Below are positions 4,372 to 56,993 of a stretch of DNA of 64,000 nucleotides, in pieces. The stretch lies in the IMG/VR virus record IMGVR_UViG_3300027668_000008, positions 242,715 through 306,714 of that record; one strand, given 5' to 3'. The translations under genes and the position numbers were made by a program. The first letter of the stretch is position 1. Every line of letters begins with the position of its first letter. The notes under the pieces were generated by a model. That model did not search any database and was not told where the DNA came from. It saw only the letters and a list, made by a program, of their open reading frames with translations.

Positions 4372-4374
4372 TAA

Positions 4375-37400: not shown

Positions 37401-38336
37401 ATGAAACAAACTTATCCAATGAGTGACTTCGACGTTGTATACATTAGTTATGACGAACCTAACGCAGAGAAGAACTGGGCAGACTTGTTAAGCAAGTGTC
37501 CATGGGCAAAACGTGTACAAGGTGTTAAAGGCTTTGATGCGGCACATAACGAAGCAGGCAGAATTGCAACCAAACGTCGACTAGTTACAGTAGACGGTGA
37601 CAATATAGTACACGCAGACTTCTTTAAACAAACTATTGAGATTGACGAAGAAGAACAAGCAGACTATATCTTTAGTTGGTGTGGACATAATATTATTAAT
37701 AGTTTAGCATACGGTAACGGCGGACTTAAACTATGGCCCAAGCACATTATTGAAAACATGAACAGTCATGAGAATGATGCAAGTGAAGACGGTGCTCATA
37801 GTGTAGACTTTTGTTGGATGCTAACGTATTACCAGATGGCAGATACATTTAGTGATGTATGTATTAACGCAACGCCTGAACAAGCATACAGAGGCGGCTT
37901 TAGAGAAGGTGTCAAGATGAGTTTAGATAAAGGTATACTTCCTCCACGTAACAAATTCCTAACACAAAATCATATAAAGAACTTACAACGTTTAAGTGTT
38001 TGGTGTAGTGTTGGTGCTGATGTGGACAACGGTGATTGGGCCTTACTAGGGGCCAGAGAAGCCGTATGCTTAACGAACTTAGATGATTGGGATCATACTC
38101 ACATCGCGGACTATGAATATATGCAACCGTTTGTTAAAGATAAATTAATTGCATATGCTGATACAGATAAACGTCAACAAGCATTTAAACACTTTGGTGA
38201 CAGATTAAGAAATGAACTACACTTTAGAGTTGCTGACTTGGATGCAGATGCAAGTATATGGTTTAAAAGTGTTTATCAAAACCCAAAACGTTTTGGCGTA
38301 ATGATAACAGAACAAGAAGCAGATAAAAAGAAATGA
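37401..38336 (+). CDS. Glycosyltransferase-like protein (GT-A fold)
   Basis: DVVYISYDEPNA, GVKGFDAAH, VDGDN (DxD), YGNGGLKL, GFREG.K; paralogue of 55208. Confidence 0.6.
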   Translation: MKQTYPMSDFDVVYISYDEPNAEKNWADLLSKCPWAKRVQGVKGFDAAHNEAGRIATKRRLVTVDGDNIVHADFFKQTIEIDEEEQADYIFSWCGHNIINSLAYGNGGLKLWPKHIIENMNSHENDASEDGAHSVDFCWMLTYYQMADTFSDVCINATPEQAYRGGFREGVKMSLDKGILPPRNKFLTQNHIKNLQRLSVWCSVGADVDNGDWALLGAREAVCLTNLDDWDHTHIADYEYMQPFVKDKLIAYADTDKRQQAFKHFGDRLRNELHFRVADLDADASIWFKSVYQNPKRFGVMITEQEADKKK

Positions 38337-38788
38337 TTCGTATAGCACACAGAGGTAACACAACAGGTCCTAATCCGTTAATGGAAAACAAACCTGAGTA
38401 CTTGCTACAAGCAGTTAACGATGGGTACGACTGTGAAGTTGATGTATGGCTTATAGATAATGAGATTTGGTTAGGGCATGACAGACCGGATTACAAAGTT
38501 GACAAAGAGTTTATCAGCAATCCAAGATTTTGGAATCATGCAAAGAATTTAAATGCATTACACTATATGTTAGAAAACAACATACATTGTTTTTGGCACG
38601 AGGGCGATGAGAGAACTCTAACTAGTAAAGGATACATATGGACGTACCCTTATAAAGAAGTAACTGAGAAAAGTATTATTTGTTTACAGCACGAGTTAGA
38701 TGTTGCTCCACAAGGGTGTTTAGGTATATGCTCCGATTGGCCTAACGATCAAAATGACGTTCACAACATCGAAGGATACCCTGTATGA
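38333..38788 (+). CDS. Short glycerophosphodiester phosphodiesterase (PLC-like) family protein
   Basis: IAHRGN, EN, EVDVW, LGHD and ICSD motifs. Confidence 0.75.
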   Translation: MIRIAHRGNTTGPNPLMENKPEYLLQAVNDGYDCEVDVWLIDNEIWLGHDRPDYKVDKEFISNPRFWNHAKNLNALHYMLENNIHCFWHEGDERTLTSKGYIWTYPYKEVTEKSIICLQHELDVAPQGCLGICSDWPNDQNDVHNIEGYPV

Positions 38789-39033
38789 AAATAAGATACT
38801 ACAAAGATATAGATGGTTTCAGATGGATAGGGTTTCTACTTGCAATGGCAAGTGCGTTTATACTATCCGGAGGTGATGCACATTTACAATGGGCTGGCTG
38901 GGGAATTGCTTTAGTTAGTTGTAGTATATGGGTATACATTGGATACCAGGATAGAGACACACCGAGAACATTAATGGAACTCATGTATTTAATATTAGCA
39001 ATACGTGGAGTTTGGAATTGGATTGGAGTATAA
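38785..39033 (+). CDS. Small three-helix membrane protein
   Basis: Three hydrophobic segments; ATGA coupling. Confidence 0.6.
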   Translation: MKIRYYKDIDGFRWIGFLLAMASAFILSGGDAHLQWAGWGIALVSCSIWVYIGYQDRDTPRTLMELMYLILAIRGVWNWIGV

Positions 39034-39034
39034 A

Positions 39035-39772
39035 ATGAAAATAGCAATCTGCCTAAGCGGACAATTAAGATCAAGTTGGAGAAAATGTATTCCAACATTT
39101 AAAGATATATTTAAAGAACATGAGGTACATTATTTTGGACACACATGGAAAACTAGAAGTGCTCCTAATTTTGTTAAAGTAACAAAAGGGATTAGTGACG
39201 TCGAAGAAGTTACAAACAATGAAGTACAAGAACTTCGTAGAGAACTTCCTGGTATTAATTTACTTGTACAAAAAGATATCGAATTTGAAGCAGGGCTTGA
39301 CCAAGCATTACATGATGTAAATTACCAAAGTCAATTCTATGGTGTAAAGGTAGCGGCACACTTAAAAAAGAGATACGAAATAGAAAACAATAGTAACTTT
39401 GATTTAGTTGTTAGATTACGTTGGGACACCATGTTTGATGAAGATTGGCAAGTACCTGAACCTAAGAAAGATACACTACAAGTTATACACTTAGGTTTCG
39501 AACAAGGTAATCACAGAAGTCGTTGTGGAGACTTATACTGGCAAGGACCAACAGATGTATATGATATTGCTTGTGATTTTTACAGTCACTTTCACAGACA
39601 TCCTAAAGAGTTTTTTGAAATGCCAGAGATGTTACACTACGGACCTGAACACGTTTTTATGTATTACTTAAAAGAATGTAACTTAAACTTGGAACAAATA
39701 TTTCCACCAATTAAGTTAGTTAGACCTAAACAAGAGCATATGACAGGCGGAGGCGATTATGAAACACTTTAA
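39035..39772 (+). CDS. Putative glycosyltransferase-like protein (KIAICLSGQ.R family)
   Basis: MKIAICLSGQLR, F.HTW, FDLVVRLRWD; start corrected to ATG 39035. Confidence 0.55.
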   Translation: MKIAICLSGQLRSSWRKCIPTFKDIFKEHEVHYFGHTWKTRSAPNFVKVTKGISDVEEVTNNEVQELRRELPGINLLVQKDIEFEAGLDQALHDVNYQSQFYGVKVAAHLKKRYEIENNSNFDLVVRLRWDTMFDEDWQVPEPKKDTLQVIHLGFEQGNHRSRCGDLYWQGPTDVYDIACDFYSHFHRHPKEFFEMPEMLHYGPEHVFMYYLKECNLNLEQIFPPIKLVRPKQEHMTGGGDYETL

Positions 39773-40523
39773 TACAGATACCGAACGTACTGCAATATGT
39801 TTTAGTGGCGAACTTAGAACTTTTAAAGTTGCGATGCCACGTATACTTGATTACTTTAGAGATACACCTGCAGACATTTATTGCCACACATGGACAACTT
39901 CCGGTGATAAACTTCATAAGAAACAAGACTTTGATTTACTAGAGGAAATGATTGATAACAGTGTACATAACTTTGTTGATATGGAATATCAAACATCTAT
40001 TAATCATGCAGGACCGTTTGGCAATATGCTTTACAGCATACAAAAGGCTAATTTTAATAAGTGTAAAACAGAAGTACGCAATAACTTTAGATACGACAAA
40101 GTAATTAAATGTAGGTACGATATGCTAGTGCCAAGTGGAAAAACATTCGGCAATAGACAAATAGAAGATAGAAGTATATACTACAGTATTGGCAACAGAG
40201 GATTAGTACCTAACGACTTTGGCAAGCATGGATTAAGTGATATTATATTCTGGGGCGACAGTCCTAGTATGGATATTGCTTGTGATACATATCGTTATTA
40301 TAATTGGGAAACATTCCCTCTAGCACTTAAACTGCAAAGTGGTTACACAATAGATCCAGGTGATAGTATGTTAAGTCCGGGTACATTAATATACCAACAA
40401 GCATTGAAACGAAATATTAAAATGGTACAAATTGTTCCACAGTTAATGGAAACACTTTGGAGAACCAATGTAGAAGATTTAGATCCAGATATACAATTTA
40501 ATGAAATAAAGGCGGCTTATTAA
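39759..40523 (+). CDS. Putative glycosyltransferase-like protein, paralogue of the upstream gene
   Basis: TAICFSGELR, YCHTW, YDKVIKCRYD, DIIFWG. Confidence 0.55.
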   Translation: MKHFNTDTERTAICFSGELRTFKVAMPRILDYFRDTPADIYCHTWTTSGDKLHKKQDFDLLEEMIDNSVHNFVDMEYQTSINHAGPFGNMLYSIQKANFNKCKTEVRNNFRYDKVIKCRYDMLVPSGKTFGNRQIEDRSIYYSIGNRGLVPNDFGKHGLSDIIFWGDSPSMDIACDTYRYYNWETFPLALKLQSGYTIDPGDSMLSPGTLIYQQALKRNIKMVQIVPQLMETLWRTNVEDLDPDIQFNEIKAAY

Positions 40524-42920: not shown

Positions 42921-43666
42921 AAACATTATATGCCAACGGAGATAGTTGGACATTTGGACAAGAACTTAAAGATGACATAGCAGATCATTTAGATTACAAG
43001 TTTTATAATACTTGGCCCTGGCACGTTGCACAAGAATTAAACATACCTCAGGTTGTAAATGAAGGACTAGGTGGCGGAAGTAATGACAGAATATTCCGTA
43101 AAACAATAGATTTTGTTAGAAACTATACAGGTAATCCAAAAGAACTATTAGTTATAGTTGCTTGGACAACATATGAACGTGTTGAAATTCCTATTAATGT
43201 TAAACGTAAACACGACAATGGTTATACACAATGGGAAGACGATAGCAACGAGTATGTTAGTGTACTACTGAATAGTCCTATTACAACTAAAACCGGCAAC
43301 AACGACACTGACAGGTTGTTACAAGATTATCATAAGAATCTTACAGTGCTGAATTCAAGTAAGGTAAATAGTATTAAGTTCTTTAACTTACAATGGTTGT
43401 TAAAACAAGTTTGCGAAAACTTAGGTGTTCATTTACAACAAGTATATGCACTAGACAATCCTGAATTTGTAGTAGGTAGTCCCGAAGCAAATAACAAATG
43501 GTTGGATGCAATATCCCCATACCCAGTTAGTTTCAACAGACAACTGATGCAATATGAACATCTTAAGGATGTAAGAGCTCCTGGCAGACACCCCAATGAA
43601 CTAGGACACAAAGAACTTGCAAACACCCTTGTTGCATATTTGCAACATCACATAAACATAAATTAA
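42911..43666 (+). CDS. SGNH/GDSL-fold protein
   Basis: NGDSWTFG, GGSNDRI, HPNELGH; start corrected to ATG 42911. Confidence 0.7.
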   Translation: MSIKTLYANGDSWTFGQELKDDIADHLDYKFYNTWPWHVAQELNIPQVVNEGLGGGSNDRIFRKTIDFVRNYTGNPKELLVIVAWTTYERVEIPINVKRKHDNGYTQWEDDSNEYVSVLLNSPITTKTGNNDTDRLLQDYHKNLTVLNSSKVNSIKFFNLQWLLKQVCENLGVHLQQVYALDNPEFVVGSPEANNKWLDAISPYPVSFNRQLMQYEHLKDVRAPGRHPNELGHKELANTLVAYLQHHININ

Positions 43667-43809: not shown

Positions 43810-44532
43810 ATGAACATTATAATCGGAATGGCAGGCGCAGGTAGTAGATTTACTAAAGCCGGTTACTCAGTACCAAAGCCGTTAGTTAGAGTTGGTAGTA
43901 CTACAATGATACAAAGCTCAGTAGAGAGTTTAGGTATCGATGGTAACTATACCTTTGTAGTTCAAGAAGAACACATGAACGATTATCCTTGGCTCGAAGC
44001 ACATTTAAAAAGTTTAGCAAACACTGTTAACATAGTTACACTAGACCATGTTACAGAAGGAGCCGCTTGTAGTTTACTACACGCAAAAGAATTTATAGAC
44101 AATGACGAACCTTTAATTAGTATCAATAGTGATCAAGTAACACATTGGGACAGTTCATTGTTCTTAGAAAAATGTCGACTCGAGCCCCACGTGAGCTGGG
44201 TAATGACCTACCCACATGACCATATCAAACATAGTTTTGTTAAAGTCAATGACGAAGGGCACATAATAAAAGCCGCAGAGAAAGTTGCAATTAGTAACGA
44301 AGCAACTGTTGGCTTATATCATTGGAGTAAAGGAAGTTTATTTGTTCAAGGTGCGGAACAAATGATAGAAAACAATGAGAGACATAATAACGAATTTTAC
44401 ATAGCACCAATATACAATTATACTTGTAAAGACAATGTGGTTAAACCATATAAAGTATCAGCAGAAAACTTTAGCCCTGTCGGCACTCCAGAAGACTTGA
44501 CTGCCTATCATAACAAGTGGTGGAAGAAATGA
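43810..44532 (+). CDS. Sugar-phosphate nucleotidyltransferase
   Basis: MAGAGSRF...PKPL, TEGAA, NSDQ, AEK, EFYIAP, GTPEDL. Confidence 0.85.
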   Translation: MNIIIGMAGAGSRFTKAGYSVPKPLVRVGSTTMIQSSVESLGIDGNYTFVVQEEHMNDYPWLEAHLKSLANTVNIVTLDHVTEGAACSLLHAKEFIDNDEPLISINSDQVTHWDSSLFLEKCRLEPHVSWVMTYPHDHIKHSFVKVNDEGHIIKAAEKVAISNEATVGLYHWSKGSLFVQGAEQMIENNERHNNEFYIAPIYNYTCKDNVVKPYKVSAENFSPVGTPEDLTAYHNKWWKK

Positions 44533-45224
44533 TTAATTGTTTATATGCAAATGGCGACAGTTGGACTGAAGGAGACGAACTAGGTTTACCTTATAGTGAT
44601 AACACACCTACATACAGATTACAAAACAGTTGGCCCAAGTTACTTGCAGATAAGTTACAAGTACCAGCAGTTGTAAATGAAGCAATCCGTGGAACAAGCG
44701 GAAGTAGAATAGCAAGACGCACTACACGTTTTATGCGTGAGTGGTGTAACAAGCACCCAGGTGCTGAATTACTTGTAGTTGTTTGTTGGACTACATTTGA
44801 ACGTGACGAACTACCGATTGATTGGCAAGGCGCAAAGTACATTCCCTATCATAACGTATGTTATAACATACCAGGTCATATACCAGGTAAGGACGAATTA
44901 AATGTTGATCCATTGTTAGTTGATACAATTAATAAAATGCATAAGCAGTATACAACAACACTAGGAAGCGAAAGTAGAAAGCAAATGCAATTCGAACGTA
45001 TGTGGAACTTGCAACAAATTGCAAAAAGTTTAAACGTAAAGTTAGTACAAACGTTTGCATTAGACGAACCTGGTGAAGATTGGAATAAAGATGTTAATTA
45101 CATTACACCAAGTTTCATTGATATGACCAAGAGTCAAGGTTGGACTTGTGGCACAGGTGGACATACATTAGAGGAAGGACATAAAGGATGGGCAAACTAT
45201 CTGTATCAAACGATAAATGGTTAG
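44529..45224 (+). CDS. SGNH/GDSL-fold protein
   Basis: NGDSWTEG and GHTLEEGH; start corrected to ATG 44529. Confidence 0.65.
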   Translation: MINCLYANGDSWTEGDELGLPYSDNTPTYRLQNSWPKLLADKLQVPAVVNEAIRGTSGSRIARRTTRFMREWCNKHPGAELLVVVCWTTFERDELPIDWQGAKYIPYHNVCYNIPGHIPGKDELNVDPLLVDTINKMHKQYTTTLGSESRKQMQFERMWNLQQIAKSLNVKLVQTFALDEPGEDWNKDVNYITPSFIDMTKSQGWTCGTGGHTLEEGHKGWANYLYQTING

Positions 45225-45472
45225 GGTGGGATTACCCAATCGCACTTGTTGCCTGTAATGGTAGAACTATATTACAGAGAACACTTGAAGTGGGAAACTT
45301 CGATACTGTAATATTAGATAACGAATTAGTACTTGATTATCCTGAACTAACCGATATGTGTAAAGTTTACGTTAATGAAGTTAAGTTTATGGATGTACAC
45401 GATCCCGATATGCTTATAGTTAATACACCAAAAGAGTTATATGAATATAACTTGTTAGAGGAACATAAATGA
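45188..45472 (+). CDS. Hypothetical protein resembling a miniaturised nucleotidyltransferase
   Basis: PIALVACNGRTILQRTLE and VNTPKEL resemble the two ends of NTP-transferases. Confidence 0.4.
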   Translation: MGKLSVSNDKWLGWDYPIALVACNGRTILQRTLEVGNFDTVILDNELVLDYPELTDMCKVYVNEVKFMDVHDPDMLIVNTPKELYEYNLLEEHK

Positions 45473-45798
45473 AGAAATTTAAACTAGATGATATGAAAGG
45501 TGGCTGGTTCGTAGGAGACTTTGAACCCACTGCTTTTAAGGCAAACTTTGAAGTAGGTATCCATCGCCATAAGAAAGGTGAGTTCCATCAGGATCACTTT
45601 CATAAAAAAGGTACAGAAATTAACTGTATGAGAAAAGGTAAAGTAAAAATTAACGGAGAAGTATTCAGCGAAGGGGATATTTTTATTCTGTATCCTTACG
45701 AAGTTAGTCAAGTGGAATACTTAACAGACGTGGAATTAACAGTAGTTAGAGATATTTGTGACACAGATGACAAATATATGTTTGACATTAAACAATAA
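45469..45798 (+). CDS. Cupin-fold protein
   Basis: GWFVGDFEP, HFHKKGTEIN, GDIFILYP. Confidence 0.7.
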   Translation: MKKFKLDDMKGGWFVGDFEPTAFKANFEVGIHRHKKGEFHQDHFHKKGTEINCMRKGKVKINGEVFSEGDIFILYPYEVSQVEYLTDVELTVVRDICDTDDKYMFDIKQ

Positions 45799-45815
45799 AG
45801 AAGGTACAATACATT

Positions 45816-46952
45816 ATGCTTGATATATACGTGGACGGAGTAGATCCTAAGGAATACTTCACAGTAACATACAAACTAGAAGGTAACGACTTAAACAAGG
45901 CGGCATTTGGATTAGCAGTCGGGCAAAGTGTAGGTAACCCTAGTGTGAGAAATGAATATGAAACTCCGGAATTGATTAGTCAATACTCGGCGAAGATTAT
46001 TGGACAGCCGGCAGACTTCATAGGCAAGAGTGCAGGCATTGTAAAAATTGCATGGCCATATAGAATTATCGATTGGGAAACTGATGGTATATCACAATTA
46101 CTGTGTGTGCTAATGGGTGGACAAATGGACATTGATTATATTCACAGATGTGAATTGTTAGACTTGGATATCGACTTTGCATTATGTGATGCAGTAGCAC
46201 CACGTTACGGATTGTCAGGTATGAGAGAACTAACAGGTAATTACAACAAGCCACTGCTAGGCAGTATTGTTAAACCTAAAACAGGACTAACAGAGAAGGC
46301 ATTAGTAGAAATTGTTACTGCTTTTGTTGAAGGCGGAGTTGACTTTATTAAGGAAGATGAGATAATGGCAAACCCGGCTTGTTTGCCCCTTAAGACACGC
46401 ATAGACGTCATACAACGGGTTCTAGCAGGAACAAACATTGTATACTGCTATTGTATCAATAGTGATCCTTTACATTTATTAGATAGAGCTAAAATGGTTG
46501 CAGATGGCGGCGGCAATGGTGTACACGTTAACTTCTGGAGTGGACATGGATCATATAAAAGTATTAACAAGTTAAACTTACCTTTGTACATACATTATCA
46601 AAAGTCAGGCGATAAAGTAATAACTAGTACAAAGAATGCATACCGTATTAGTTGGTATGTGTTATGTAAGTTGGCAAGTATCTGTGGAGTGGATACAATC
46701 CATACAGGTATGTGGGGCGGGTATTTAAGTGATGATGAAAACGAACTAAAGAGCACAATGCATATGTTAAGTGGTAACAATGTAGTGCCTGCTTTAAGTT
46801 GCGGTATGACAGCAGAACTTATACCAGAAATAACAAGACGCTTCGGTGTCGACTATATGGCAAACGTTGGTGGAGCAATTCACGAACACCCAGATGGTAT
46901 GAAAGCCGGAGCTCATAAATTAAGAAAAGCAATAGATAGTGTAACTAGATGA
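45816..46952 (+). CDS. RuBisCO-like protein (form IV)
   Basis: GQSVG, KPKTGL, GGVDFIKEDE, GVDTIHTG, SCG, GGAIHEHPDG..AGA. Confidence 0.9.
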   Translation: MLDIYVDGVDPKEYFTVTYKLEGNDLNKAAFGLAVGQSVGNPSVRNEYETPELISQYSAKIIGQPADFIGKSAGIVKIAWPYRIIDWETDGISQLLCVLMGGQMDIDYIHRCELLDLDIDFALCDAVAPRYGLSGMRELTGNYNKPLLGSIVKPKTGLTEKALVEIVTAFVEGGVDFIKEDEIMANPACLPLKTRIDVIQRVLAGTNIVYCYCINSDPLHLLDRAKMVADGGGNGVHVNFWSGHGSYKSINKLNLPLYIHYQKSGDKVITSTKNAYRISWYVLCKLASICGVDTIHTGMWGGYLSDDENELKSTMHMLSGNNVVPALSCGMTAELIPEITRRFGVDYMANVGGAIHEHPDGMKAGAHKLRKAIDSVTR

Positions 46953-47116
46953 TTATAGATAAAAAAGATAAGAAAGATTATACAGCACCGACACCAGCAG
47001 AGCTTCAACGAAAACTCGACGAGCGAATGAAAAAGTTCTTAGACAAGGGAGGCAAAGTTGAAAAACTTGACCCAATGAAACCTACAAAGGAACAAATCAA
47101 GAGTTGGACAGTGTAG
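46949..47116 (+). CDS. 55-aa protein with SutA-like RNAP-binding motif (not in ORF track)
   Basis: MIIDKKDKKDYTAPTPAELQRKLDERMKKFLDKGGKVEKLDPMKPTKEQIKSWTV; overlaps both neighbours. Confidence 0.55.
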   Translation: MIIDKKDKKDYTAPTPAELQRKLDERMKKFLDKGGKVEKLDPMKPTKEQIKSWTV

Positions 47117-47814
47117 TGATTAACTATGTGTTTGATGTAGACGGCACACTTTCATACAGTAGAGAAGTTATGCCTCCTCATTTTAGGATCTGGTTTTTAA
47201 ACTGGATGAAAGGCAAGAATGTCTTTATTGTTACAGGTAGTGATAGACCTAAAACAATAGAACAGATTGGACACGAGATTGTAGACAACTGTGCTATGGT
47301 ATTCCAATGTGCTGGTAACAGTGTATGGCGTAATGGTATCGAAGTTGCTACTAGTAGTTTAAACGCTCCTGCAGATATGGACACATGGTTAGAAGCACAA
47401 GTAGACTTTAGTAAGTATCCACACAAGTACGGACACCACATTGAAAAGAGAGCAGGGCTAATAAACTTTAGTACTGTAGGACGTAATGCAGTAGGACCTG
47501 AACGTGACCATTACTTTAATTGGGATTGTAAAGAACAAGAACGTGTTAGTATATGTGAACACTTTAATAAAACTTTCCCAGGCTTTGAAGCAGAGCTAGG
47601 TGGGAACACAAGTATCGATATACATTTAAAAGGCAAGAACAAAGCACAGGTGTATGACATTATAGGATCGCCTATGGTGTTCTTTGGAGACAGAATTCAT
47701 GTTAATGGTAACGATAAACCACTAGCGGATAAAATGATACACCCACAGGATAAGTGGCATCAAGTCGATGGACCTTATACAACAGAAGACATACTTAAAA
47801 AAGATTATTCCTAA
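47116..47814 (+). CDS. HAD IIB phosphomannomutase-like enzyme
   Basis: FDVDGTL, VTGSD, IEKRAGLINFS..GRNA, GG..SIDI...GKNK, FFGD....GND; probable GTG start at 47116. Confidence 0.8.
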   Translation: MINYVFDVDGTLSYSREVMPPHFRIWFLNWMKGKNVFIVTGSDRPKTIEQIGHEIVDNCAMVFQCAGNSVWRNGIEVATSSLNAPADMDTWLEAQVDFSKYPHKYGHHIEKRAGLINFSTVGRNAVGPERDHYFNWDCKEQERVSICEHFNKTFPGFEAELGGNTSIDIHLKGKNKAQVYDIIGSPMVFFGDRIHVNGNDKPLADKMIHPQDKWHQVDGPYTTEDILKKDYS

Positions 47815-49172
47815 TGGACTTTATTGGCGCGAACCCACATGAGATGAAAGCAAAACTGAATGCAGTAGGACCTGGATTCTGTTTAGCCAAGTGGACACAA
47901 CTTACACTTAACTTACAAAATGGAACTGCACACAGTTGCCACCACCCACCAGTACATCAAGTACCTGTAAACGAAATTAAACTAGACCCTAGTTCATTAC
48001 ATAACTCCATTTATAAAAAACAACAACGTAAAGAAATGCTCGAAGGTGGTAGACCTAAAGAGTGTGATTACTGTTGGAGAGTTGAAGATGCAGATCCAAA
48101 TGCGTTAAGTGACAGACATTTAAAGAGTGCATTTAGTTGGAGCAACAAACACTTTGATACAATTAAAAACAATGATTGGAGTACAAACTTTCAGCCTAGT
48201 TATGTAGAAGTAAGTTTTGGATATGCTTGTAATTTTAAATGTATGTATTGCAGTCCTGCTATTAGTAGTTCATGGATGAAAGAAGTAAAACAACATGGCG
48301 GCTTTGGAACATCGGACAATTACAATGATATTAAATGGACTGAACGTCAAGGCAGAATGCCTATACCAGAACGAGAACATAATCCATATGTAGAAGCATT
48401 TTGGGAATGGTGGCCCGACTTGTATCCAGCCTTACATACATTCCGTGTTACAGGTGGCGAGCCACTTATGAATAAGAACACATTCAAGATGATGGATTGG
48501 ATTATTAATACTGAAACACCAAACACAAATTTGTTGTTAGGTATTAACAGTAACTTCTGTGTAGAGGATAAACTGTTTGACAGATTTATAGATAGATCAA
48601 AGCAAGTATTAGCAAGTGGCAAAGTTCGTAAACTAGAAGTGTACACAAGTGCAGAAGCATTTGGTAACAAAGCAGAATACATTAGAACTGGATTAGATTA
48701 TAAAAAGTTTATGAAGAATGTAGACTTTGTTTTAAATGAATTTAAAGACGAGCCCAATTTTAGTATTACATTTATGTGTACTTACAATGCATTAAGTGTT
48801 ACAACATTCAAAGACTTCTTAATAGACTTAATTGAATTAAGAAAAACATACGGTAGAGATTGTATGTATATCGATATACCTTTTCTTAGGTATCCAGAGA
48901 TGATGGATGTTAAAGTGCTTGACGATAGTTTCGAAAAGTACATGACCGACACTGTAACATATATGGAACAAAATGAATCTGAAGGATTGATGCATAGTAG
49001 TGAAACAGATAAACTAAAGCGTATTATAGAATACTGGCGTAGTCAACGTACAGTAGATCACACTAATCATAGGAAGAACTTTAAAGTATACACTGCAGAA
49101 CTAGATACACGCAGAAATACAGTGTTCGCTGATGTTTTCCCCGAATATATGCAGTGGTTCGATGCAATTTAA
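47814..49172 (+). CDS. Radical SAM enzyme with N-terminal twitch-like auxiliary Fe-S domain
   Basis: CNFKCMYC, TGGEP; N-terminal FCLAKW...SC...CDYC. Confidence 0.85.
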   Translation: MDFIGANPHEMKAKLNAVGPGFCLAKWTQLTLNLQNGTAHSCHHPPVHQVPVNEIKLDPSSLHNSIYKKQQRKEMLEGGRPKECDYCWRVEDADPNALSDRHLKSAFSWSNKHFDTIKNNDWSTNFQPSYVEVSFGYACNFKCMYCSPAISSSWMKEVKQHGGFGTSDNYNDIKWTERQGRMPIPEREHNPYVEAFWEWWPDLYPALHTFRVTGGEPLMNKNTFKMMDWIINTETPNTNLLLGINSNFCVEDKLFDRFIDRSKQVLASGKVRKLEVYTSAEAFGNKAEYIRTGLDYKKFMKNVDFVLNEFKDEPNFSITFMCTYNALSVTTFKDFLIDLIELRKTYGRDCMYIDIPFLRYPEMMDVKVLDDSFEKYMTDTVTYMEQNESEGLMHSSETDKLKRIIEYWRSQRTVDHTNHRKNFKVYTAELDTRRNTVFADVFPEYMQWFDAI

Positions 49173-50379
49173 CACAATTTATATAAATAACATTAGTAAA
49201 GAAATAGATCAGAGTATTGTTGATGCAATATCAACTACAAGCCTGTTAGATCAATCTAACAACTCTGACACAATCCCAGACAGAGTACATTCTCTAATCA
49301 CAAACACTGGGACAAAAAATCCGTATTTTATATTAAATGGACCTTGTAAATGGTTCGCATCTTGGTCGGATACACGGATTAACTTCTCTCGTCATACAGA
49401 GGTATACTTCTTTTTATACGAAGTATTAACAGTATGGCAAAATCACTCCAGATATAATTGTCCAGTGGGTAGTATAGAAAAAGACTGTATAATCAATGAA
49501 TTCGAAATGATCGATACATGGTGCAAGAAGCACAACGTTAGTAAGTATAAAATATTTACAAATGAGTATCGCATGAAAGAACAATTACAGCAAACGAAAT
49601 ACGCCAACTGGGCAATATATCCTTTAGACACATTCTCATTAAGTTATAGTTCTCATAAAAAGCAACCTAGTCAAGGTGCTCCTGAGGAAATCAAACACAA
49701 ATTAAATTGCTTTACATACCGCTGGGATCAACATAGACATTCTGCAGTAGCAATTCTTCACGACATTATGCCTGAGGATAGTGTCATGACACACTTTCAC
49801 AATACAGATGATTGTGTATTAAAATATCCTTTAGACAACAGCAAGTACTTCGAATCTTATACTAGAGGTTGTAACGACCTTATGAACCATTTACCTTTAG
49901 TAGTTGATGAACCAATTGAAACAAAAGTAGTTAGTATGAGAGATTGGCTTAACCCAAGTACAGGAACAATAAATAATATAGGTACAGTTGATCCACTAGA
50001 AAACTTATACTGGAATTCATTTGCTAGTGTAGTGTGTGAAACAAACTATGAATATCCTTGGGGTCAGATTAGTGAGAAGACTATTAACCCAATGAAACAG
50101 GGATCGCCTGTACTACTGTTAGCAGGTCCACACAGTTTAGAACTATTGCAACAATGGGGACTGAAAACATTCCACGAATTTTGGGACGAAGGTTATGACA
50201 ATGAACTGGATCCTGTCAAACGTATGGATAAGGTATTTGATATCGTAACAGACATCAGTAACTTATCATACCATGAGTTAGAAGTAATAAAGAAACATAT
50301 GAAACCCTTACTTGTACACAACCGTAATTTAATACGAACAGGTGAGATGCGAAATAATATTATAAAGGCACTACAATGA
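49162..50379 (+). CDS. Hypothetical protein with glycosyltransferase-like C-terminus
   Basis: VVCET...ISEKT..P...P......L..L...G.KTF..FWDEGYD; start probably ATG 49162. Confidence 0.45.
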   Translation: MQFNTIYINNISKEIDQSIVDAISTTSLLDQSNNSDTIPDRVHSLITNTGTKNPYFILNGPCKWFASWSDTRINFSRHTEVYFFLYEVLTVWQNHSRYNCPVGSIEKDCIINEFEMIDTWCKKHNVSKYKIFTNEYRMKEQLQQTKYANWAIYPLDTFSLSYSSHKKQPSQGAPEEIKHKLNCFTYRWDQHRHSAVAILHDIMPEDSVMTHFHNTDDCVLKYPLDNSKYFESYTRGCNDLMNHLPLVVDEPIETKVVSMRDWLNPSTGTINNIGTVDPLENLYWNSFASVVCETNYEYPWGQISEKTINPMKQGSPVLLLAGPHSLELLQQWGLKTFHEFWDEGYDNELDPVKRMDKVFDIVTDISNLSYHELEVIKKHMKPLLVHNRNLIRTGEMRNNIIKALQ

Positions 50380-51518
50380 ATATAGGTTGGTTTGGATTAG
50401 GAAAACTTGGAATGATCAGTTCCGAGATGCTAGTTAGTAAAGGACATACAGTTACAGGGTATGACACAAAAGAACGCACTAGTGAGCTTGTACGAGTGTC
50501 TAAGACACCGGAAGAAGCAGTTGTAGGACAGGACTTTGTTTTTGTTGCAGTACAAACTCCACACGATAAAGACTATGGTGGAGAGAAGCCTATAACACAT
50601 TTACCAAACAAAGACTTTGGTTTAGATCCTGTTAAAGAATGCTTAAAAGAAATTAACAAATATGCAACAGAAGATACTATTGTTGTATTAATTAGTACAG
50701 TGTTACCTGGTACTACACGCAGAGAGTTTGCGAACTTGTTAGACAAAGCAAGATTAATTTATAACCCGTACTTAATTGCTATGGGTACAGTTGCATACGA
50801 TATGGTAAATCCAGATATGGTTATCGTAGGAGGCAACAGACCTAACGATACTGATGCACAAGCATTAGTAAACTTTTATAAAACAGTAATGGAGAATGAT
50901 CCACATTATAATATTGGAACATGGGAAGAAGCAGAAGCAACAAAGATATTTTATAACACCTTTATTAGTGCGAGGTTGAGTCTAGTTAATATGATTCAAG
51001 ACGTTGCCCAAAGTGTAGGTAATATGAATGTCGATGTTGTAACTAATAGTCTGAGTAACGCAGGACAACGTATAACCAGTGCCGCTTATATGAAAGCAGG
51101 CATGGGCGATGGCGGTCCTTGTCACCCTAGAGATAATATTGCATTAAGACATCTTGCAGAAAGATTGGATCTAGGTTACGACTTGTTTGACGCCATTGCT
51201 AAAAGTAGAGAAGTACAAGCCGAACGTATGGCAAAAGATATATTAAGGTATGGAAATGAAATTGCATTTACGAGCGATACATATAAGCCAGGAGTAGAAT
51301 ACACTGACGGATCCTATGCTCTACTAGTACAACATTATATTAAAAACATGGGTGGGACTATTACTAATGGACCAGCAAAGGTTCTAGTAATAACTCACCC
51401 TGTTGATACAATTGAGTTACCAAGACAAACAGAAATAGTATTTGATCCATGGAGACAGTTTATGACCATTGGACACCACGGAGTGAAAGTTATTCATTAT
51501 GGAAACACACGAGCTTAG
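50376..51518 (+). CDS. UDP-glucose/GDP-mannose dehydrogenase family protein
   Basis: GLGKLG, VAVQTP, STVLPGTT, YNP, K..YN, GDGGPCHPRD, DPW. Confidence 0.85.
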   Translation: MNIGWFGLGKLGMISSEMLVSKGHTVTGYDTKERTSELVRVSKTPEEAVVGQDFVFVAVQTPHDKDYGGEKPITHLPNKDFGLDPVKECLKEINKYATEDTIVVLISTVLPGTTRREFANLLDKARLIYNPYLIAMGTVAYDMVNPDMVIVGGNRPNDTDAQALVNFYKTVMENDPHYNIGTWEEAEATKIFYNTFISARLSLVNMIQDVAQSVGNMNVDVVTNSLSNAGQRITSAAYMKAGMGDGGPCHPRDNIALRHLAERLDLGYDLFDAIAKSREVQAERMAKDILRYGNEIAFTSDTYKPGVEYTDGSYALLVQHYIKNMGGTITNGPAKVLVITHPVDTIELPRQTEIVFDPWRQFMTIGHHGVKVIHYGNTRA

Positions 51519-52023
51519 TCCTCTAGAGTATCATACTATAGAACTTGATCCTGTTTGGGAGACAAGTGACTTCGATCAATTTGAATATAAACGAAATGAA
51601 TACGGAGACATGGAGCAACTAGCGAAATGGAAGACTGCTGGACATACACATAATAACTTTACTGGTATGATGTTTAATGATCAGTTAGCAATTCCACAAT
51701 GGGCAAAAGACATTGGTAAAATATTAGATTGGAAAGACTGCGGTTTTACATTCTACAAGATGACAACGGGCGACATACTGCCGCCACACGCAGACCATTA
51801 CAACAAGTATAAAGAACTTTTTGGTATTGAGTCTAGCGATGATGTGTTACGTTGTTTAGTATTCTTGGAAGACAAAAAACAAGGGCACATATTTGAAATA
51901 GACCAGTACAGTATGAACTGGCACAAAGGAGGTGCCGTACTATGGAGAGGAAGAGTTCCACATAGTGCAGGTAACATAGGTTATGAATCAAGATACACAT
52001 TACAAATTACAGGACATTATTAA
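51499..52023 (+). CDS. 2OG-Fe(II) oxygenase-like protein
   Basis: LPPHAD (HxD), PHSAGN and RYTLQITG. Confidence 0.7.
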   Translation: METHELSPLEYHTIELDPVWETSDFDQFEYKRNEYGDMEQLAKWKTAGHTHNNFTGMMFNDQLAIPQWAKDIGKILDWKDCGFTFYKMTTGDILPPHADHYNKYKELFGIESSDDVLRCLVFLEDKKQGHIFEIDQYSMNWHKGGAVLWRGRVPHSAGNIGYESRYTLQITGHY

Positions 52024-52681
52024 ACTCGACACACTAGAGTTGTTGCGTGAATATGGTGTTAGTTGGAATAGTCCATACGACATTATACTAGAATTTGAAA
52101 GACGTTTAGCAACGTTCACAGGATCACCGTATGTAGTAACAACAGACTGTTGCACTCATGCACTTGAGTTATGCATACGTTGGTACAGACAACGACATCC
52201 AAGTCGTGTTCCGTCTATTACTATACCGGATCAAACATACCTTAGTGTTCCAATGATGTTGCAAAAGGTTGGAGCATCATTTACTATATCTGATAAAGAA
52301 TGGATAGGTGAATACCAACTAGGACAGTTGCCTATATATGATAGTGCAAGACGATTACAACACAATATGTATGAAGAAGATACCTTTAAATGCTTGAGTT
52401 TCGGACACGGAAAACCGTTGACAATCGGCAAAGGAGGTGCTATAATATTAGATAATAGAGAAGCCTACGACTGGATGATTCGTGCTAGATACGATGGTAG
52501 AGACCTTAACGTGTCTCCCTGGGATAAAGAGCAATATGAAACAGTAGGTTACCATTACTATATGTCGCCAGAACAAGCGGCAGTTGGTATTGTAAAATTA
52601 GATGAGTACAAAGATACTGCACCAATAAAAGTAAAGTATCCGAGTATTACAAAATGTTTTAAGATGGGGAATAATACATGA
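51983..52681 (+). CDS. DegT/DnrJ/StrS PLP-dependent sugar aminotransferase (short form)
   Basis: FERRLATFTG...DCCTHALEL, TY.S, DSA, CLSFGHGKPL..GKGG. Confidence 0.8.
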   Translation: MNQDTHYKLQDIIKLDTLELLREYGVSWNSPYDIILEFERRLATFTGSPYVVTTDCCTHALELCIRWYRQRHPSRVPSITIPDQTYLSVPMMLQKVGASFTISDKEWIGEYQLGQLPIYDSARRLQHNMYEEDTFKCLSFGHGKPLTIGKGGAIILDNREAYDWMIRARYDGRDLNVSPWDKEQYETVGYHYYMSPEQAAVGIVKLDEYKDTAPIKVKYPSITKCFKMGNNT

Positions 52682-53682
52682 TTATAGAATCGCATAATGA
52701 ATGGGATCCATTAAAGAAGGTTGTACTAGGTGATGTGCATGGAGCAAGATTCCCAAAGTATGATGACGTATTTAATGAAGTTGCAAAACACAGTAAGTGG
52801 ACAGAGTCGGCACAGCCACTAGGACCAATTAATCAAGACGTACTAGACTTAACAGACCATGAACTCAGAGAGTTTGAAAATGTGTTAACAGAGTTAGGTG
52901 TCGAAGTGTTACGTCCGAGGCAGTTAGACTTTCAACAAACAGTACACGGTTATAGATACTTTGCAGATGGTATGTATAATTATTGCCCACGTGACATTAT
53001 ACTTGTTGTAGGTAATACAGTAATTGAAACTCCTGTATTGTTTCACAGTAGGTTTCACGAAACAGAAGCATATAGAGATATTAAAAACAAGGCTATGGCT
53101 TCAGGAGTTAAATGGATTAGTGCTCCAAGACACGCACTACCAGTACACGAAGTATTTGAGAATGGAAAACTTACAGAGAAGACTCCAATCTTTGATGCGG
53201 CTAACGTAATGCGTTTTGGTAATGACTTGTTGTACTTAAAAAGTCAAACAGGTAATGCCGCGGGTGCTCAATGGTTAAGTACAGTGCTTGGTTCAGAATA
53301 TACAGTTCACATATGGGAAGATGTTTATGCGTTTGCACACATTGATAGTACTATTGCGGCACTGAATGAATCGACATTATTAATTAACAAACAACGAGTT
53401 AAGCCTTCACAGTTACCAACGTTTTTGAAAAAGCACAAACGTATCTGGGTTGACAGTGTAGAGGACATGGAGTTTCATAAATATCCATATGCTAGTAACT
53501 GGATTGGAATGAATGTGTTAAGCATTGATCCTAAAACAGTTGTCGTCGATCCTAGACAAAGAAAATTAATTAAAAAGTTAGAGAAAGCAAAGTTCGAAGT
53601 AGTACCTGTACAACTTACACACAGTCGTACACTAGGCGGCGGACATCATTGCGTTACATTAGATTTGGAGAGGCGAGCATAA
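52678..53682 (+). CDS. Amidinotransferase (glycine/inosamine-phosphate amidinotransferase family)
   Basis: SHNEWDPLK.V, CPRD, FDAAN, TGN..G..W, HIDST, GGGHHCVTLDL; Asp-His-Cys triad present. Confidence 0.9.
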   Translation: MIIESHNEWDPLKKVVLGDVHGARFPKYDDVFNEVAKHSKWTESAQPLGPINQDVLDLTDHELREFENVLTELGVEVLRPRQLDFQQTVHGYRYFADGMYNYCPRDIILVVGNTVIETPVLFHSRFHETEAYRDIKNKAMASGVKWISAPRHALPVHEVFENGKLTEKTPIFDAANVMRFGNDLLYLKSQTGNAAGAQWLSTVLGSEYTVHIWEDVYAFAHIDSTIAALNESTLLINKQRVKPSQLPTFLKKHKRIWVDSVEDMEFHKYPYASNWIGMNVLSIDPKTVVVDPRQRKLIKKLEKAKFEVVPVQLTHSRTLGGGHHCVTLDLERRA

Positions 53683-56775: not shown

Positions 56776-56993
56776 AAATAATAAAATATGCTAGTGCCTG
56801 TTTTATTTTATTAGCAATGGTATTTCATGTTGCAGGTATTACACCTTGGAACAGTATACTACAAATGATAGGAGCAAGTGGTTGGATATATGTAGGCTAC
56901 AAATGGAAAGAGAAGGCTCTTATACTTAACTTCCTTCCACAATTTTTTATAATTATTCCAATGTTAATTTGGATATACTGGATAGCACAATGA
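56766..56993 (+). CDS. Small membrane protein
   Basis: Three hydrophobic segments; W.YVG..W pattern resembling 38785. Confidence 0.6.
   Translation: MSIKIIKYASACFILLAMVFHVAGITPWNSILQMIGASGWIYVGYKWKEKALILNFLPQFFIIIPMLIWIYWIAQ

What the first reader, a model, noticed from the sequence alone, without database searches (positions are those of the whole stretch)
43810..47814. Form IV RuBisCO-like protein in an apparent NDP-sugar biosynthesis module
Seen: the protein keeps the K175/K177 equivalents (KPK), the carbamylated Lys and Mg ligands (KEDE for KDDE), H327 and the phosphate-binding S.G/GG loops. It has HYQK in place of HxHR (H294 to Q) and no loop-6 K334 (GGYL), so it is not a carboxylase. 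Its neighbours are a nucleotidyltransferase, a cupin and a HAD phosphomutase. Known: characterised RLPs do enolisation, isomerisation or (trans/de)carboxylation on sugar-phosphate-like substrates in methionine salvage and in apiose/hamamelose catabolism. Inference: here an RLP acts anabolically, making a rare or branched sugar phosphate that is mutated, nucleotide-activated and epimerised. That would be a new RLP role, and in a virus.
Basis: partly seen in the sequence, partly recalled or inferred. Interest (0 to 1): 0.82.

Follow-up and report, generated by a model that had tools for sequence, protein, structure and literature searches.

The report
Phage RuBisCO-like protein tied to nucleotidyltransferase
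A large T4-like marine phage carries a non-carboxylating RuBisCO relative that, across hundreds of phages, bacteria and archaea, sits next to (and is sometimes fused to) a sugar-activating nucleotidyltransferase inside glycan-building gene islands, which points to an untested biosynthetic role for this enzyme superfamily.

Summary
ORF 45816-46952 (+) is a 378-aa RuBisCO-like protein (Pfam 4.2e-35). It keeps KPK, the carbamate Lys and both Mg ligands, H327 and the phosphate loops. It has H294->Q and K334->Y, so it is not a carboxylase. It reaches no NCBIfam cutoff (form III, MtnW, OiaX). It belongs to a well-supported separate clade, very probably the "Form IV-like" phage RLP clade of Jaffe et al. 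2019, so an RLP in a virus is not new.

What appears unreported is the context. A PF00483 nucleotidyltransferase lies within three genes of the RLP in 46/48 viral and 32/35 cellular sequence groups. One 667-aa protein fuses the two. A 109-aa monocupin and a ~150-aa GDPD-like protein are frequent partners. The PMM-type HAD is restricted to a phage subset (7/48 viral, 0/35 cellular). Cellular copies (SAR11, DPANN, CPR, Verrucomicrobia, Nonomuraea, Azospirillum) sit in LPS or polysaccharide loci. dN/dS is 0.05-0.10.

Best reading: the RLP enolises or isomerises a ketose phosphate whose product is nucleotide-activated for a glycan. The substrate and the acceptor are unknown.

The parts
45816..46952 (+). 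RuBisCO-like protein (378 aa), member of the phage/'Form IV-like' RLP clade. It keeps the enolisation core and lacks the carboxylase residues.
   Evidence: Pfam PF00016 4.2e-35. No NCBIfam cutoff is reached. Active-site map. Clade support SH-aLRT 100. dN/dS 0.05-0.10.
43810..44532 (+). Nucleotidyltransferase (240 aa; PF00483, MurU/GlmU-N/RmlA-like). This is the near-universal partner of the RLP.
   Evidence: Pfam 2.3e-10. NCBIfam Arch_glmU 4e-12 and MurU 3.5e-7, both below cutoff. PDB 4evw 2.6e-10. Within 3 genes of the RLP in 46/48 viral and 32/35 cellular groups. 35% identical to the partner gene in L005. RLP-NTase fusion P0122.
45469..45798 (+). 109-aa monocupin with the metal motif G-x5-HxH-x4-E-x6-G. 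A frequent partner, immediately upstream of the RLP.
   Evidence: Family Pfam hits Cupin_7 and Cupin_2. AF2 pLDDT 96.7. Foldseek finds cupins, including mini phosphomannose isomerases 7zvy/7zvm. 38% identical to the L005 partner. dN/dS 0.02.
47104..47814 (+). PMM-type HAD-IIB phosphomutase (236 aa, TTG start, DVDGT motif). An accessory gene found only in a phage subset.
   Evidence: Pfam PMM 8.7e-20. Sequence. Present in 7/48 viral and 0/35 cellular groups.
38333..38788 (+). ~150-aa GDPD-like mini-protein (cluster c4). A frequent fourth partner of the cassette; in this phage it lies 7 kb upstream.
   Evidence: Invariant H6 R7 N19 E35 D37 H49. Profile against PDB GDPD 7e0v gives 5.5e-5 over the N-terminal 52 residues. 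AF2 pLDDT 92. The top Foldseek hits are GDPDs but weak: E 0.017, TM 0.38-0.48. A full-length Pfam GDPD stands in the equivalent archaeal locus L038.
44517..45224 (+). DUF6071 / GDSL-like (SGNH) protein. One of several paralogues in the island (also 40523-41395 and 42872-43666).
   Evidence: Pfam DUF6071 5.7e-10, 3.3e-24 and 1.5e-10. The family is restricted to viral loci.
45188..45472 (+). 94-aa ORF of unknown function between the DUF6071 gene and the cupin gene. Its stop overlaps the cupin start.
   Evidence: No Pfam or NCBIfam hit. Conserved only in 7 close loci.
39005..40523 (+). Two tandem DUF7796 paralogues (255 and 254 aa). They often co-occur with the cassette in phages.
   Evidence: 15/28 family members hit PF25072. 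Present in 28/48 viral groups. No PDB relative by sequence.
47814..55208 (+). Downstream sugar-tailoring genes of the same + strand island: twitch radical SAM, a 415-aa unknown, NDP-sugar dehydrogenase, a 2OG-oxygenase-like ORF, a short DegT aminotransferase, an ADI-like ORF and a carbamoyltransferase.
   Evidence: NCBIfam N_Twi_rSAM 6.8e-98 and NDP-sugDHase 1.6e-40. Pfam DegT and Carbam_trans.

Best explanation
The gene encodes a catalytically competent, non-carboxylating RuBisCO-like protein. It is one part of a conserved cassette: nucleotidyltransferase, usually a small cupin, the RLP, and often a GDPD-like mini-protein. The cassette is embedded in glycan-biosynthesis islands.

Shown here: clade membership, the residue pattern, purifying selection, conserved synteny, one gene fusion, and the glycan context of cellular copies.

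Inferred: the RLP uses its retained carbamyl-Lys/Mg2+ site (K201, D203, E204, with K175, K177 and H327) and one retained phosphate cradle (S379, G381, G403, G404) to enolise a ketose phosphate taken from central metabolism. The result would be an isomerised or epimerised sugar phosphate. A pentulose phosphate such as Ru5P or Xu5P is the best guess. The cupin would act as an aldose-ketose isomerase on that product or on the substrate. In this phage lineage the PMM-type mutase would move the phosphate to C1. The MurU/GlmU-like nucleotidyltransferase would then make an NDP- (or CDP-) activated donor. That donor would be tailored and transferred by the surrounding enzymes (dehydrogenase, aminotransferase, carbamoyltransferase, radical SAM, DUF7796, SGNH).

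The acceptor is unknown. It could be the virion, the host envelope or DNA.
For: The RLP is real and under selection: Pfam 4.2e-35 and dN/dS 0.05-0.10. The enolisation core is invariant in 83/83 family members while H294 and K334 are replaced in 83/83. The NTase is within 3 genes of the RLP in 46/48 viral and 32/35 cellular 85%-identity groups; the cupin in 35/48 and 10/35 (gene orders). The partner genes are true orthologues in distant loci: NTase 35% identity, E 2e-51; cupin 38%, E 9e-26. P0122 is a 667-aa RLP+NTP_transferase fusion that scores 509.7 bits on the family profile. The ESM Atlas lists 82 such fusions. In the complete Pelagibacter genome the cassette lies among GmhA, a PfkB kinase, a heptosyltransferase, a HAD-NTase and a KdsB-like gene. 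In another bacterium it lies among GT1/GT2, WavE, RmlC and the priming Bac_transf. The sister RLP P0137 has a cupin-type sugar-phosphate isomerase (PF06560) directly upstream, and the cupin model resembles mini phosphomannose isomerases. Atlas look-alikes of the NTase in viruses are fused to RpiB, DHBP synthase and HAD mutases, all of which use Ru5P or R5P. There is a precedent: T4-like phages make NDP-arabinose from Ru5P with an isomerase plus a MurU-like NTase (PMC13326640). Fragments of the NTase, cupin, RLP and PMM genes occur in four marine metatranscriptome runs.
Against: There is no biochemical evidence, and no substrate can be deduced from the sequence. NTases normally take sugar-1-phosphates, and no mutase or kinase is conserved with the cassette. 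Either host enzymes fill that step, or the NTase activates a non-anomeric phosphate. The role of the GDPD-like partner is unexplained by a simple NDP-sugar route. The pentulose guess rests on Atlas look-alikes (no alignment, no E-value) and on analogy. RNA-library fragments may be DNA carry-over. The position of the clade among RLPs is unresolved: a sister relation to MtnW is not rejected (p-AU 0.31).
Confidence: 0.6

Rival explanations
1. Phosphodiester head-group route, a variant of the best explanation. The RLP product keeps a non-anomeric phosphate. An IspD/LicC/TarI-like NTase activates it as CDP-X. It is then installed as an X-phosphate (teichoic-acid-like) decoration. The GDPD-like protein would make, trim or recycle the phosphodiester.
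For: No mutase is conserved with the cassette (PMM 7/48 viral, 0/35 cellular). A GDPD-like protein is in the locus in 34/48 viral and 14/35 cellular groups, and a full Pfam GDPD stands in archaeal L038. The NTase also hits NTP_transf_3 weakly, as well as inositol-1-P cytidylyltransferase models. Atlas neighbours include IspD- and phosphocholine-cytidylyltransferase-labelled clusters.
Against: The GDPD assignment of the 150-aa protein is weak: only 52 residues match by sequence, and Foldseek gives E 0.017. No LicD, TagF or CDP-alcohol transferase was seen next to the cassette. This phage does carry a PMM.
Confidence: 0.2
2. Methionine, MTA or 5'-deoxyadenosine salvage. The RLP, HAD and cupin would mimic MtnW, MtnX and MtnD (or the R. 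rubrum RLP/cupin shunt). They would dispose of the ribose by-products of the many radical-SAM enzymes in the island.
For: There are four radical-SAM genes in the window. Related phages carry a PNP_UDP_1 phosphorylase, a phosphoribosyltransferase and MetK near the RLP. MtnW models are among the RLP's best sub-threshold hits. A sister relation of the whole family to MtnW is not rejected (p-AU 0.31).
Against: The scores of 126 and 102 bits are far below the MtnW cutoffs of 409 and 513.6. Placing the window RLP with true MtnW is rejected (p-AU 0.005). The HAD is PMM-type, not MtnX-type, and is absent from most loci. The cupin family hits no ARD model. No MtnA, MtnB or MtnK is in the window. The universal partner is an NTase, and cellular contexts are LPS or polysaccharide loci.
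Confidence: 0.07
3. Catabolic auxiliary gene. Like OiaX/OiaT or the sister RLP P0137, it would help the infected host degrade an uncommon sugar or sugar acid.
For: All characterised RLPs are catabolic or salvage enzymes (general knowledge). The sister P0137 lies in a kinase/transketolase/aldolase/ABC-transporter/glycosidase cluster.
Against: OiaX scores 118 bits against a cutoff of 700. There is no four-carbon-acid kinase, transporter or aldolase beside any family member. The OiaX-type RLPs form a separate clade (SH-aLRT 100). The NTase fusion and the glycosyltransferase context point the other way.
Confidence: 0.06
4. Non-catalytic or decayed RuBisCO homologue, for example a structural or regulatory protein.
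For: Several RuBisCO catalytic residues are lost: E60, N123, H294 and K334.
Against: The Mg/carbamate site and the phosphate loops are invariant in 83/83 sequences spanning less than 40% identity. dN/dS is 0.05-0.10. The replacements themselves (Q262, Y303, C329) are invariant, as expected for a re-tooled active site.
Confidence: 0.03

Closest known systems
'Form IV-like' phage RuBisCO-like proteins (Jaffe, Castelle, Dupont, Banfield 2019, Mol Biol Evol; PMC6389311)
   Same: They are divergent RLPs on Myoviridae-type and unusually large phage contigs from many environments. They group with Beckwithbacteria sequences and branch outside the other RLP clades. Here the window is a T4-like myovirus, a Beckwithbacteria sequence (L022) lies in the family, and the clade is separate from the rest.
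   Different: That paper left the function open. It does not mention a nucleotidyltransferase, cupin or glycan context. It knew only about 80 phage and 2 CPR sequences. Here the family also holds SAR11, DPANN, Verrucomicrobia, Nonomuraea and Azospirillum. Identity with their sequence set could not be checked directly.
MtnW / YkrW 2,3-diketo-5-methylthiopentyl-1-phosphate enolase (methionine salvage)
   Same: Same fold, with a carbamyl-Lys/Mg2+ enolisation site. It works with a HAD (MtnX) and a cupin (MtnD) in Bacillus (textbook knowledge).
   Different: Scores are far below both MtnW model cutoffs. It is not inside the MtnW clade. K177 is kept here. The HAD and cupin are of other subfamilies. 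The NTase partner has no counterpart in salvage.
Rhodospirillum rubrum DeepYkr RLP (MTRu-1-P 1,3-isomerase) with its cupin MTXu-5-P methylsulfurylase (recalled from memory, not tested)
   Same: An RLP that isomerises a ketose phosphate, followed by a small cupin enzyme. The product (DXP) is later cytidylylated via IspD.
   Different: No reference sequence was available here. The context there is MTA salvage and isoprenoids, not glycan loci.
OiaX / OiaT RLPs of D-apiose catabolism
   Same: Non-carboxylating RLPs. OiaX also has Tyr at the K334 position.
   Different: They form a separate clade. OiaX scores 118 bits against a cutoff of 700. They are always next to a four-carbon acid sugar kinase, which is absent here. 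K177 is lost in them and kept here.
Form III RuBisCO of the archaeal/CPR AMP pathway (including e2b2-RuBisCO fusions)
   Same: Best-scoring model (152 bits) and best-scoring structure (2cwx). The KPK motif is kept. Both are found in DPANN and CPR.
   Different: The score is below the cutoff of 497. H294, K334, E60 and N123 are lost. There is no AMP phosphorylase or R15P isomerase partner.
Phage Ru5P -> NDP-arabinose pathway for arabinosyl-5-hydroxycytosine DNA (RB69, DLP3; PMC13326640), and the ManA/ManB/ManC logic of GDP-mannose synthesis
   Same: A T4-like phage diverts a ketose phosphate through an isomerase, a phosphate shift and a MurU-like NTase to an NDP-sugar. The trio of cupin isomerase, PMM and NTase is the GDP-mannose logic.
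   Different: Those pathways use a SIS-type isomerase and a kinase domain, and no RLP. No DNA-modification genes were identified in this window.

Membership tests
RuBisCO large-subunit superfamily (PF00016) | Significant match to the catalytic TIM-barrel domain above the curated cutoff | tested here: met
   121.9 bits against a cutoff of 30.1, E 4.2e-35.
RuBisCO large-subunit superfamily (PF00016) | Carbamylatable Lys (K201) and Mg2+ ligands D203 and E204 | tested here: met
   K179, D181 and E182 are invariant in 83/83 family members.
Bona fide RuBisCO carboxylase (forms I-III) | Loop-6 K334 and H294, plus E60 and N123 | tested here: not met
   K334->Y and H294->Q in 83/83. E60 and N123 are replaced.
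Bona fide RuBisCO carboxylase (forms I-III) | NCBIfam equivalog or subfamily cutoffs (form III 497, PRK04208 438, form II 489) | tested here: not met
   152, 150 and 90 bits.
MtnW (DK-MTP-1-P enolase) | Score above the curated equivalog cutoffs | tested here: not met
   126 bits against 409, and 102 against 513.6. A true MtnW control, P0251, scores 652 and 641.
MtnW (DK-MTP-1-P enolase) | Phylogenetic placement inside the MtnW clade | tested here: not met
   The family is its own clade (SH-aLRT 100). Holding window+L001 with true MtnW costs 148.9 lnL (p-AU 0.005). A sister relation of the whole family to MtnW is not rejected (p-AU 0.31).
MtnW (DK-MTP-1-P enolase) | Methionine-salvage neighbours (MtnA, MtnB, MtnK, MtnX, MtnD) | tested here: not met
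   None were found among the ORFs scanned from 33.7 to 62.3 kb. The cupin family hits no ARD model. The HAD is PMM-type.
MtnW (DK-MTP-1-P enolase) | Enolase activity on DK-MTP-1-P | not testable with these tools
   Needs an enzyme assay.
OiaX/OiaT apiose-pathway RLPs | Equivalog cutoff and an adjacent four-carbon acid sugar kinase | tested here: not met
   118 bits against a cutoff of 700. No such kinase is near any family member, whereas the plasmid references all have one.
'Form IV-like' phage RLP clade (Jaffe et al. 2019) | Encoded on myovirus or large phage contigs; clusters with Beckwithbacteria; outside the other RLP clades | tested here: met
   T4-like structural genes. 306.7-kb IMG/VR contig. 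Beckwithbacteria L022 lies in the family. The clade is separate. No direct sequence comparison with their set was possible.
Sugar-phosphate nucleotidyltransferase (PF00483), ORF 43810-44532 | Pfam match above cutoff and an N-terminal G-x-G-x-R ... PKPL signature | tested here: met
   40.9 bits against a cutoff of 21.2. The sequence reads GMAGAGSRF...PKPL. Substrate and nucleotide specificity are not testable here.
Cupin superfamily, ORF 45469-45798 | Double-stranded beta-helix fold with the HxH...E metal motif | tested here: met
   AF2 pLDDT 96.7. Foldseek finds cupins with probability 1.0. H43, H45 and E50 are conserved. The family hits Cupin_7 and Cupin_2.
PMM / HAD-IIB phosphomutase, ORF 47104-47814 | Pfam PMM match and the DxDxT nucleophile motif | tested here: met
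   71.9 bits against a cutoff of 22.4. DVDGT lies at residues 11-15.
GDPD (glycerophosphodiester phosphodiesterase), ORF 38333-38788 | Full TIM barrel with the HR...EN...ExD...HD catalytic set | tested here: inconclusive
   The motif residues are invariant, and the N-terminal 52 residues match PDB GDPD at 5.5e-5. But the protein is only about 150 aa, only 1/40 members hit Pfam GDPD (at E 0.098), and Foldseek is weak.

The most novel reading that the evidence does not exclude
This RLP family would be the first anabolic branch of the RuBisCO superfamily. It would be a ketose-phosphate isomerase or epimerase (or C-C rearranging enzyme), functionally coupled and in at least one protein fused to a nucleotidyltransferase. 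It would make an undescribed nucleotide-activated sugar or sugar-phosphate head group. That group would decorate the LPS or capsules of SAR11, DPANN archaea and CPR bacteria, and the virions, host envelope or DNA of large aquatic phages.
Probability: 0.45. Interest if true: 0.85.

Novelty: new variant of a known kind. Interest (0 to 1): 0.68.

Why it matters
All RuBisCO-like proteins characterised so far work in salvage or catabolism. A clade wired to nucleotide activation inside glycan loci would add a biosynthetic function to the most studied enzyme superfamily. It would also give a function to the 'Form IV-like' phage RLPs, left open since 2019. The cassette occurs in very abundant ocean bacteria (SAR11), in minimal-genome DPANN and CPR organisms, and in at least 387 IMG/VR viral contigs. 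Its product could therefore be a widespread, still unknown surface or DNA decoration that bears on phage-host recognition. The hypothesis is directly testable, because cultured carriers exist (Azospirillum oleiclasticum, Nonomuraea rosea, Pelagibacter) and the four proteins are small.

Tried and rejected
- megablast and tblastn of the region and the RLP against 50,697 GenBank phage records gave no match. Isolated phages give no help.
- No tRNA genes in the window.
- Sequence search of the cupin against the PDB gave only noise. A structure prediction was needed instead.
- Pfam on the 150-aa partner family gave essentially nothing. The DUF7796 profile has no PDB relative.
- The 232-aa gene upstream of the NTase in freshwater phages is unrelated to the PMM.
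- The contig of the RLP-NTase fusion P0122 is only 2.5 kb with no DNA served, so it gives no context.
- The apparent 706-aa 'fusion' ORF in Azospirillum L054 is an over-called high-GC frame. The genes there are separate: GDPD-like, RLP, cupin, NTase.
- The Atlas 'RLP+Cupin_2' fusion cluster could not be verified by sequence and may belong to another RLP clade. The long hits P0196, P0205 and P0229 have no cupin domain.
- The 108-aa ORF after the short dehydrogenase is not its missing C-terminus.
- The deep branching order of RLP clades could not be resolved (p-AU 0.31 for family+MtnW).
- No labelled IV-Photo, DeepYkr or IV-GOS reference sequences could be obtained. A link to Tabita's IV-GOS clade is only a recollection.
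- Literature searches combining RLP with nucleotidyltransferase, cupin, nucleotide sugar, polysaccharide or Pelagibacter found nothing relevant beyond Jaffe et al..
- The carboxylase reading is rejected on residues. The pseudo-enzyme reading is rejected on conservation and dN/dS.

Full report
WHAT IS THERE. The window is part of a large T4-like myovirus. It carries SbcC/SbcD homologues (2602-5388, minus strand), a baseplate hub, a PAAR-like protein, a baseplate wedge, tail-fibre-like proteins and a 4178-aa ORF. GC content is about 36% and it has no tRNA genes. Over the RLP it is 100% identical to IMG/VR contig 3300027668_000008, which is 306,714 bp long. From about 33.7 kb to the end of the window, all genes lie on the + strand and form a sugar-tailoring and radical-SAM island. 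The finding's interval holds six ORFs. These are a nucleotidyltransferase (43810-44532), a DUF6071/GDSL-like protein (44517-45224), a 94-aa ORF (45188-45472), a 109-aa cupin (45469-45798), the RLP (45816-46952) and a PMM-type HAD (47104-47814). Their starts and stops overlap or nearly abut, as in an operon.

The 378-aa protein matches the RuBisCO large-chain catalytic domain at E 4.2e-35. Its best solved relative is form III RuBisCO 2cwx, E 4e-33. I aligned it with a form I reference and 83 dereplicated relatives.
- Invariant in 83/83: K175, K177, K201, D203, E204, S379, G381 and G403. H327 is kept in 77/83 and G404 in 80/83.
- Replaced in 83/83: H294->Q, K334->Y, G380->C, and the E60, T65, W66 and N123 positions.
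- Replaced in most: R295->K (77/83) and H298->D (75/83).
This is a re-tooled active site rather than a decayed one. dN/dS against three phage relatives is 0.05-0.10. It cannot be a carboxylase.

WHICH RLP IT IS. No NCBIfam model reaches its cutoff: form III 152 bits against 497, MtnW 126 against 409 and 102 against 513.6, OiaX 118 against 700. An exhaustive profile search of 1.84 billion representatives shows a score gap. Family members score at least about 340 bits, and everything else scores 213 or less. I built a 148-row tree. Its references were labelled by NCBIfam or by plasmid annotation: true MtnW P0251, true form III P0199, form III-like e2b2 fusions, OiaX-type RLPs, form I and form II. 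In that tree the family is one clade (SH-aLRT 100) with a single sister, P0137. Forcing the window's RLP to group with true MtnW is rejected (p-AU 0.005). The deep order of RLP clades is not resolved, however: the whole family as sister of MtnW is not rejected (p-AU 0.31). The clade matches the 'Form IV-like' phage RLPs of Jaffe et al. 2019 (PMC6389311). That paper described about 80 sequences on Myoviridae-type contigs and a ~200-kb phage, grouped with Beckwithbacteria, and left the function open. A Beckwithbacteria sequence (L022) lies in my family. So 'an RLP in a virus' is already known.

DISTRIBUTION. IMG/VR holds 387 viral contigs that encode a relative. GTDB genomes with the family include a complete Pelagibacter chromosome and many SAR11 single-cell genomes. 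They also include Woese-, Nano-, Pace- and Micrarchaeota, Patescibacteria (Beckwithbacteria, Saccharibacteria), a Verrucomicrobiae chromosome, Elusimicrobia, Bacteroidota, and the isolates Nonomuraea rosea and Azospirillum oleiclasticum. Rooted on P0137, the basal branches are cellular. All viral sequences nest in one 65-row clade together with CPR, Verrucomicrobia and SAR11 sequences, and at least 8 virus/cell switches are forced. The freshwater relatives that first looked bacterial (ClpA-like, PDF, DnaJ, L33, IF1-like, PhoH) are IMG/VR huge-phage contigs of up to 518 kb.

THE APPARENTLY UNREPORTED PART: A CONSERVED CASSETTE. I called ORFs in 137 fetched loci and searched them with HMMs built from the window's proteins.
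- The nucleotidyltransferase is within three genes of the RLP in 46/48 viral and 32/35 cellular 85%-identity groups.
- The usual viral order is NTase-cupin-RLP. SAR11 and DPANN have NTase-RLP(-NTase) or RLP-NTase.
- The partners are orthologous across distant loci: NTase 35% identity, E 2e-51; cupin 38%, E 9e-26.
- P0122 is a 667-aa protein with RuBisCO_large followed by NTP_transferase, and it scores 509.7 bits on the family profile. The ESM Atlas lists a cluster of 82 such fusions.
- The cupin is within three genes in 35/48 viral and 10/35 cellular groups.
- A fourth partner, about 150 aa (window 38333-38788), is in the locus in 34/48 viral and 14/35 cellular groups, often directly beside the RLP or NTase. 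It carries an invariant HR...N...ExD...H set, and its first 52 residues match GDPD at 5.5e-5. The fold evidence is weak, though. A full-length Pfam GDPD sits in the equivalent archaeal locus.

CONTEXT. In the complete Pelagibacter genome the cassette lies among GmhA, a PfkB kinase, an HldE-type adenylyltransferase, a HAD-NTase fusion, a GT9 heptosyltransferase and a KdsB-like gene. That is an LPS-core region. In a 372-kb bacterial contig it lies among GT1/GT2, WavE, RmlC, an IMPase-family phosphatase and the priming Bac_transf. Other frequent neighbours are extended-SDR epimerases/dehydratases, sugar O-methyltransferases, DegT aminotransferases and NDP-sugar dehydrogenases. In one phage group an APH-type kinase plus a DHQ-synthase-like sugar-phosphate cyclase also occur. 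None of the loci shows methionine-salvage genes or four-carbon-acid kinases.

MECHANISM (INFERENCE). The retained carbamyl-Lys/Mg2+ site, K175, K177, H327 and one phosphate cradle fit the reaction common to the superfamily, which is enolisation of a keto-sugar phosphate. The loss of K334, H294 and E60 removes CO2 chemistry. The most economical reading of the synteny and the fusion is that the RLP makes a sugar phosphate that the NTase activates. Three observations bear on the cupin and the substrate.
- The cupin is a minimal monocupin (pLDDT 96.7) whose best characterised fold matches include ~100-aa archaeal phosphomannose isomerases.
- The sister RLP P0137 has a cupin-type sugar-phosphate isomerase directly upstream. 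An aldose-ketose isomerase role for the cupin is therefore plausible but unproven.
- Atlas look-alikes of the NTase in viruses are fused to RpiB, DHBP synthase and HAD mutases. T4-like phages are known to turn Ru5P into NDP-arabinose with an isomerase and a MurU-like NTase (PMC13326640).
For these reasons I favour a pentulose-phosphate substrate, with low confidence. The missing conserved mutase and the GDPD-like partner keep a CDP-X / phosphodiester variant alive. The acceptor in the phage (virion, host envelope or DNA) is unknown.

EXPRESSION. Contigs 97-100% identical to parts of the NTase, DUF6071, cupin, RLP and PMM genes occur in four marine metatranscriptome runs. This is compatible with transcription, but DNA carry-over is not excluded.

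VERDICT. The HAD is not core, the cupin-as-epimerase and branched-sugar ideas are unsupported, and viral RLPs are not new. I found no paper in the searched library that connects RLPs with nucleotide activation or glycan synthesis. This is a new functional variant of a known kind, with a directly testable hypothesis.

Noticed in passing
window 16804-29340 (+): A single 4178-aa ORF directly after the baseplate wedge gene. It is presumably a giant virion or fibre protein and could be a glycosylation target.
   Followed up: no
window 47814-49172, 58678-59763, 59763-60920, 60917-62338 (+): Four radical-SAM genes lie in the same island. Two are of the 'twitch' N_Twi_rSAM type (328 and 423 bits). A related 291-kb phage contig (L008) also carries a SAM synthetase.
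   Followed up: partly
window 56969-57736 and 57738-58064 (+): A second, short NDP-sugar dehydrogenase homologue (255 aa, no C-terminal domain) is followed by a 108-aa ORF. That ORF carries a cupin metal motif (HSHAGQEEVYYFVKG) and is not the missing C-terminus, so it looks like a second mini-cupin.
   Followed up: partly
window 51983-52681 (+): The DegT/DnrJ-type aminotransferase homologue is only 232 aa, against about 360 aa for typical members. It may be truncated or a split gene.
   Followed up: no
window 40523-41395, 42872-43666, 44517-45224; 39005-40523: The island has multiple paralogues of DUF6071 (SGNH/GDSL-like) and two tandem DUF7796 genes. DUF6071 was seen only in viral loci of this data set.
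   Followed up: partly
P0207, P0154, P0161: Other unusual RuBisCO-superfamily fusions turned up. One is a TIR-domain + RuBisCO-like protein (583 aa). Two are IF-2B/e2b2 (ribose-1,5-bisphosphate isomerase-like) + form III-like RuBisCO fusions (726 and 742 aa).
   Followed up: partly
ESM Atlas clusters: Look-alikes of the phage nucleotidyltransferase form large, almost purely viral clusters. They are fused to RpiB/LacAB (289 members), DHBP synthase (229 members) or HAD phosphatase/mutase domains. This suggests a wider family of phage pentose-phosphate-to-nucleotide-sugar modules.
   Followed up: no
L083:2073-4108 (also L121, L128, L130, L132): In one phage group an APH/fructosamine-kinase-like protein and a DHQ-synthase-like sugar-phosphate cyclase follow the RLP directly. 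This is reminiscent of cyclitol pathways.
   Followed up: partly
L005, L011/L070, L014, L072: Freshwater RLP-bearing contigs of up to 518 kb encode ribosomal protein L33, an IF1-like protein, a ClpA-like ATPase, peptide deformylase, DnaJ, PhoH and collagen-like proteins. IMG/VR lists them as viral, so they are huge phages.
   Followed up: partly
L144:7393-9287: The closest outgroup RLP (P0137, 428 aa) sits behind a cupin-type glucose-6-phosphate isomerase. Its cluster has an FGGY kinase, a split transketolase, FBP aldolase, an ABC transporter and glycosidases. This is an uncharacterised catabolic RLP context.
   Followed up: no
window 46949-47116 (+): A 55-aa ORF bridges the 150-bp gap between the RLP and the TTG-started PMM gene. 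It recurs in the near-identical contigs L058-L060. Its coding status is unknown.
   Followed up: no
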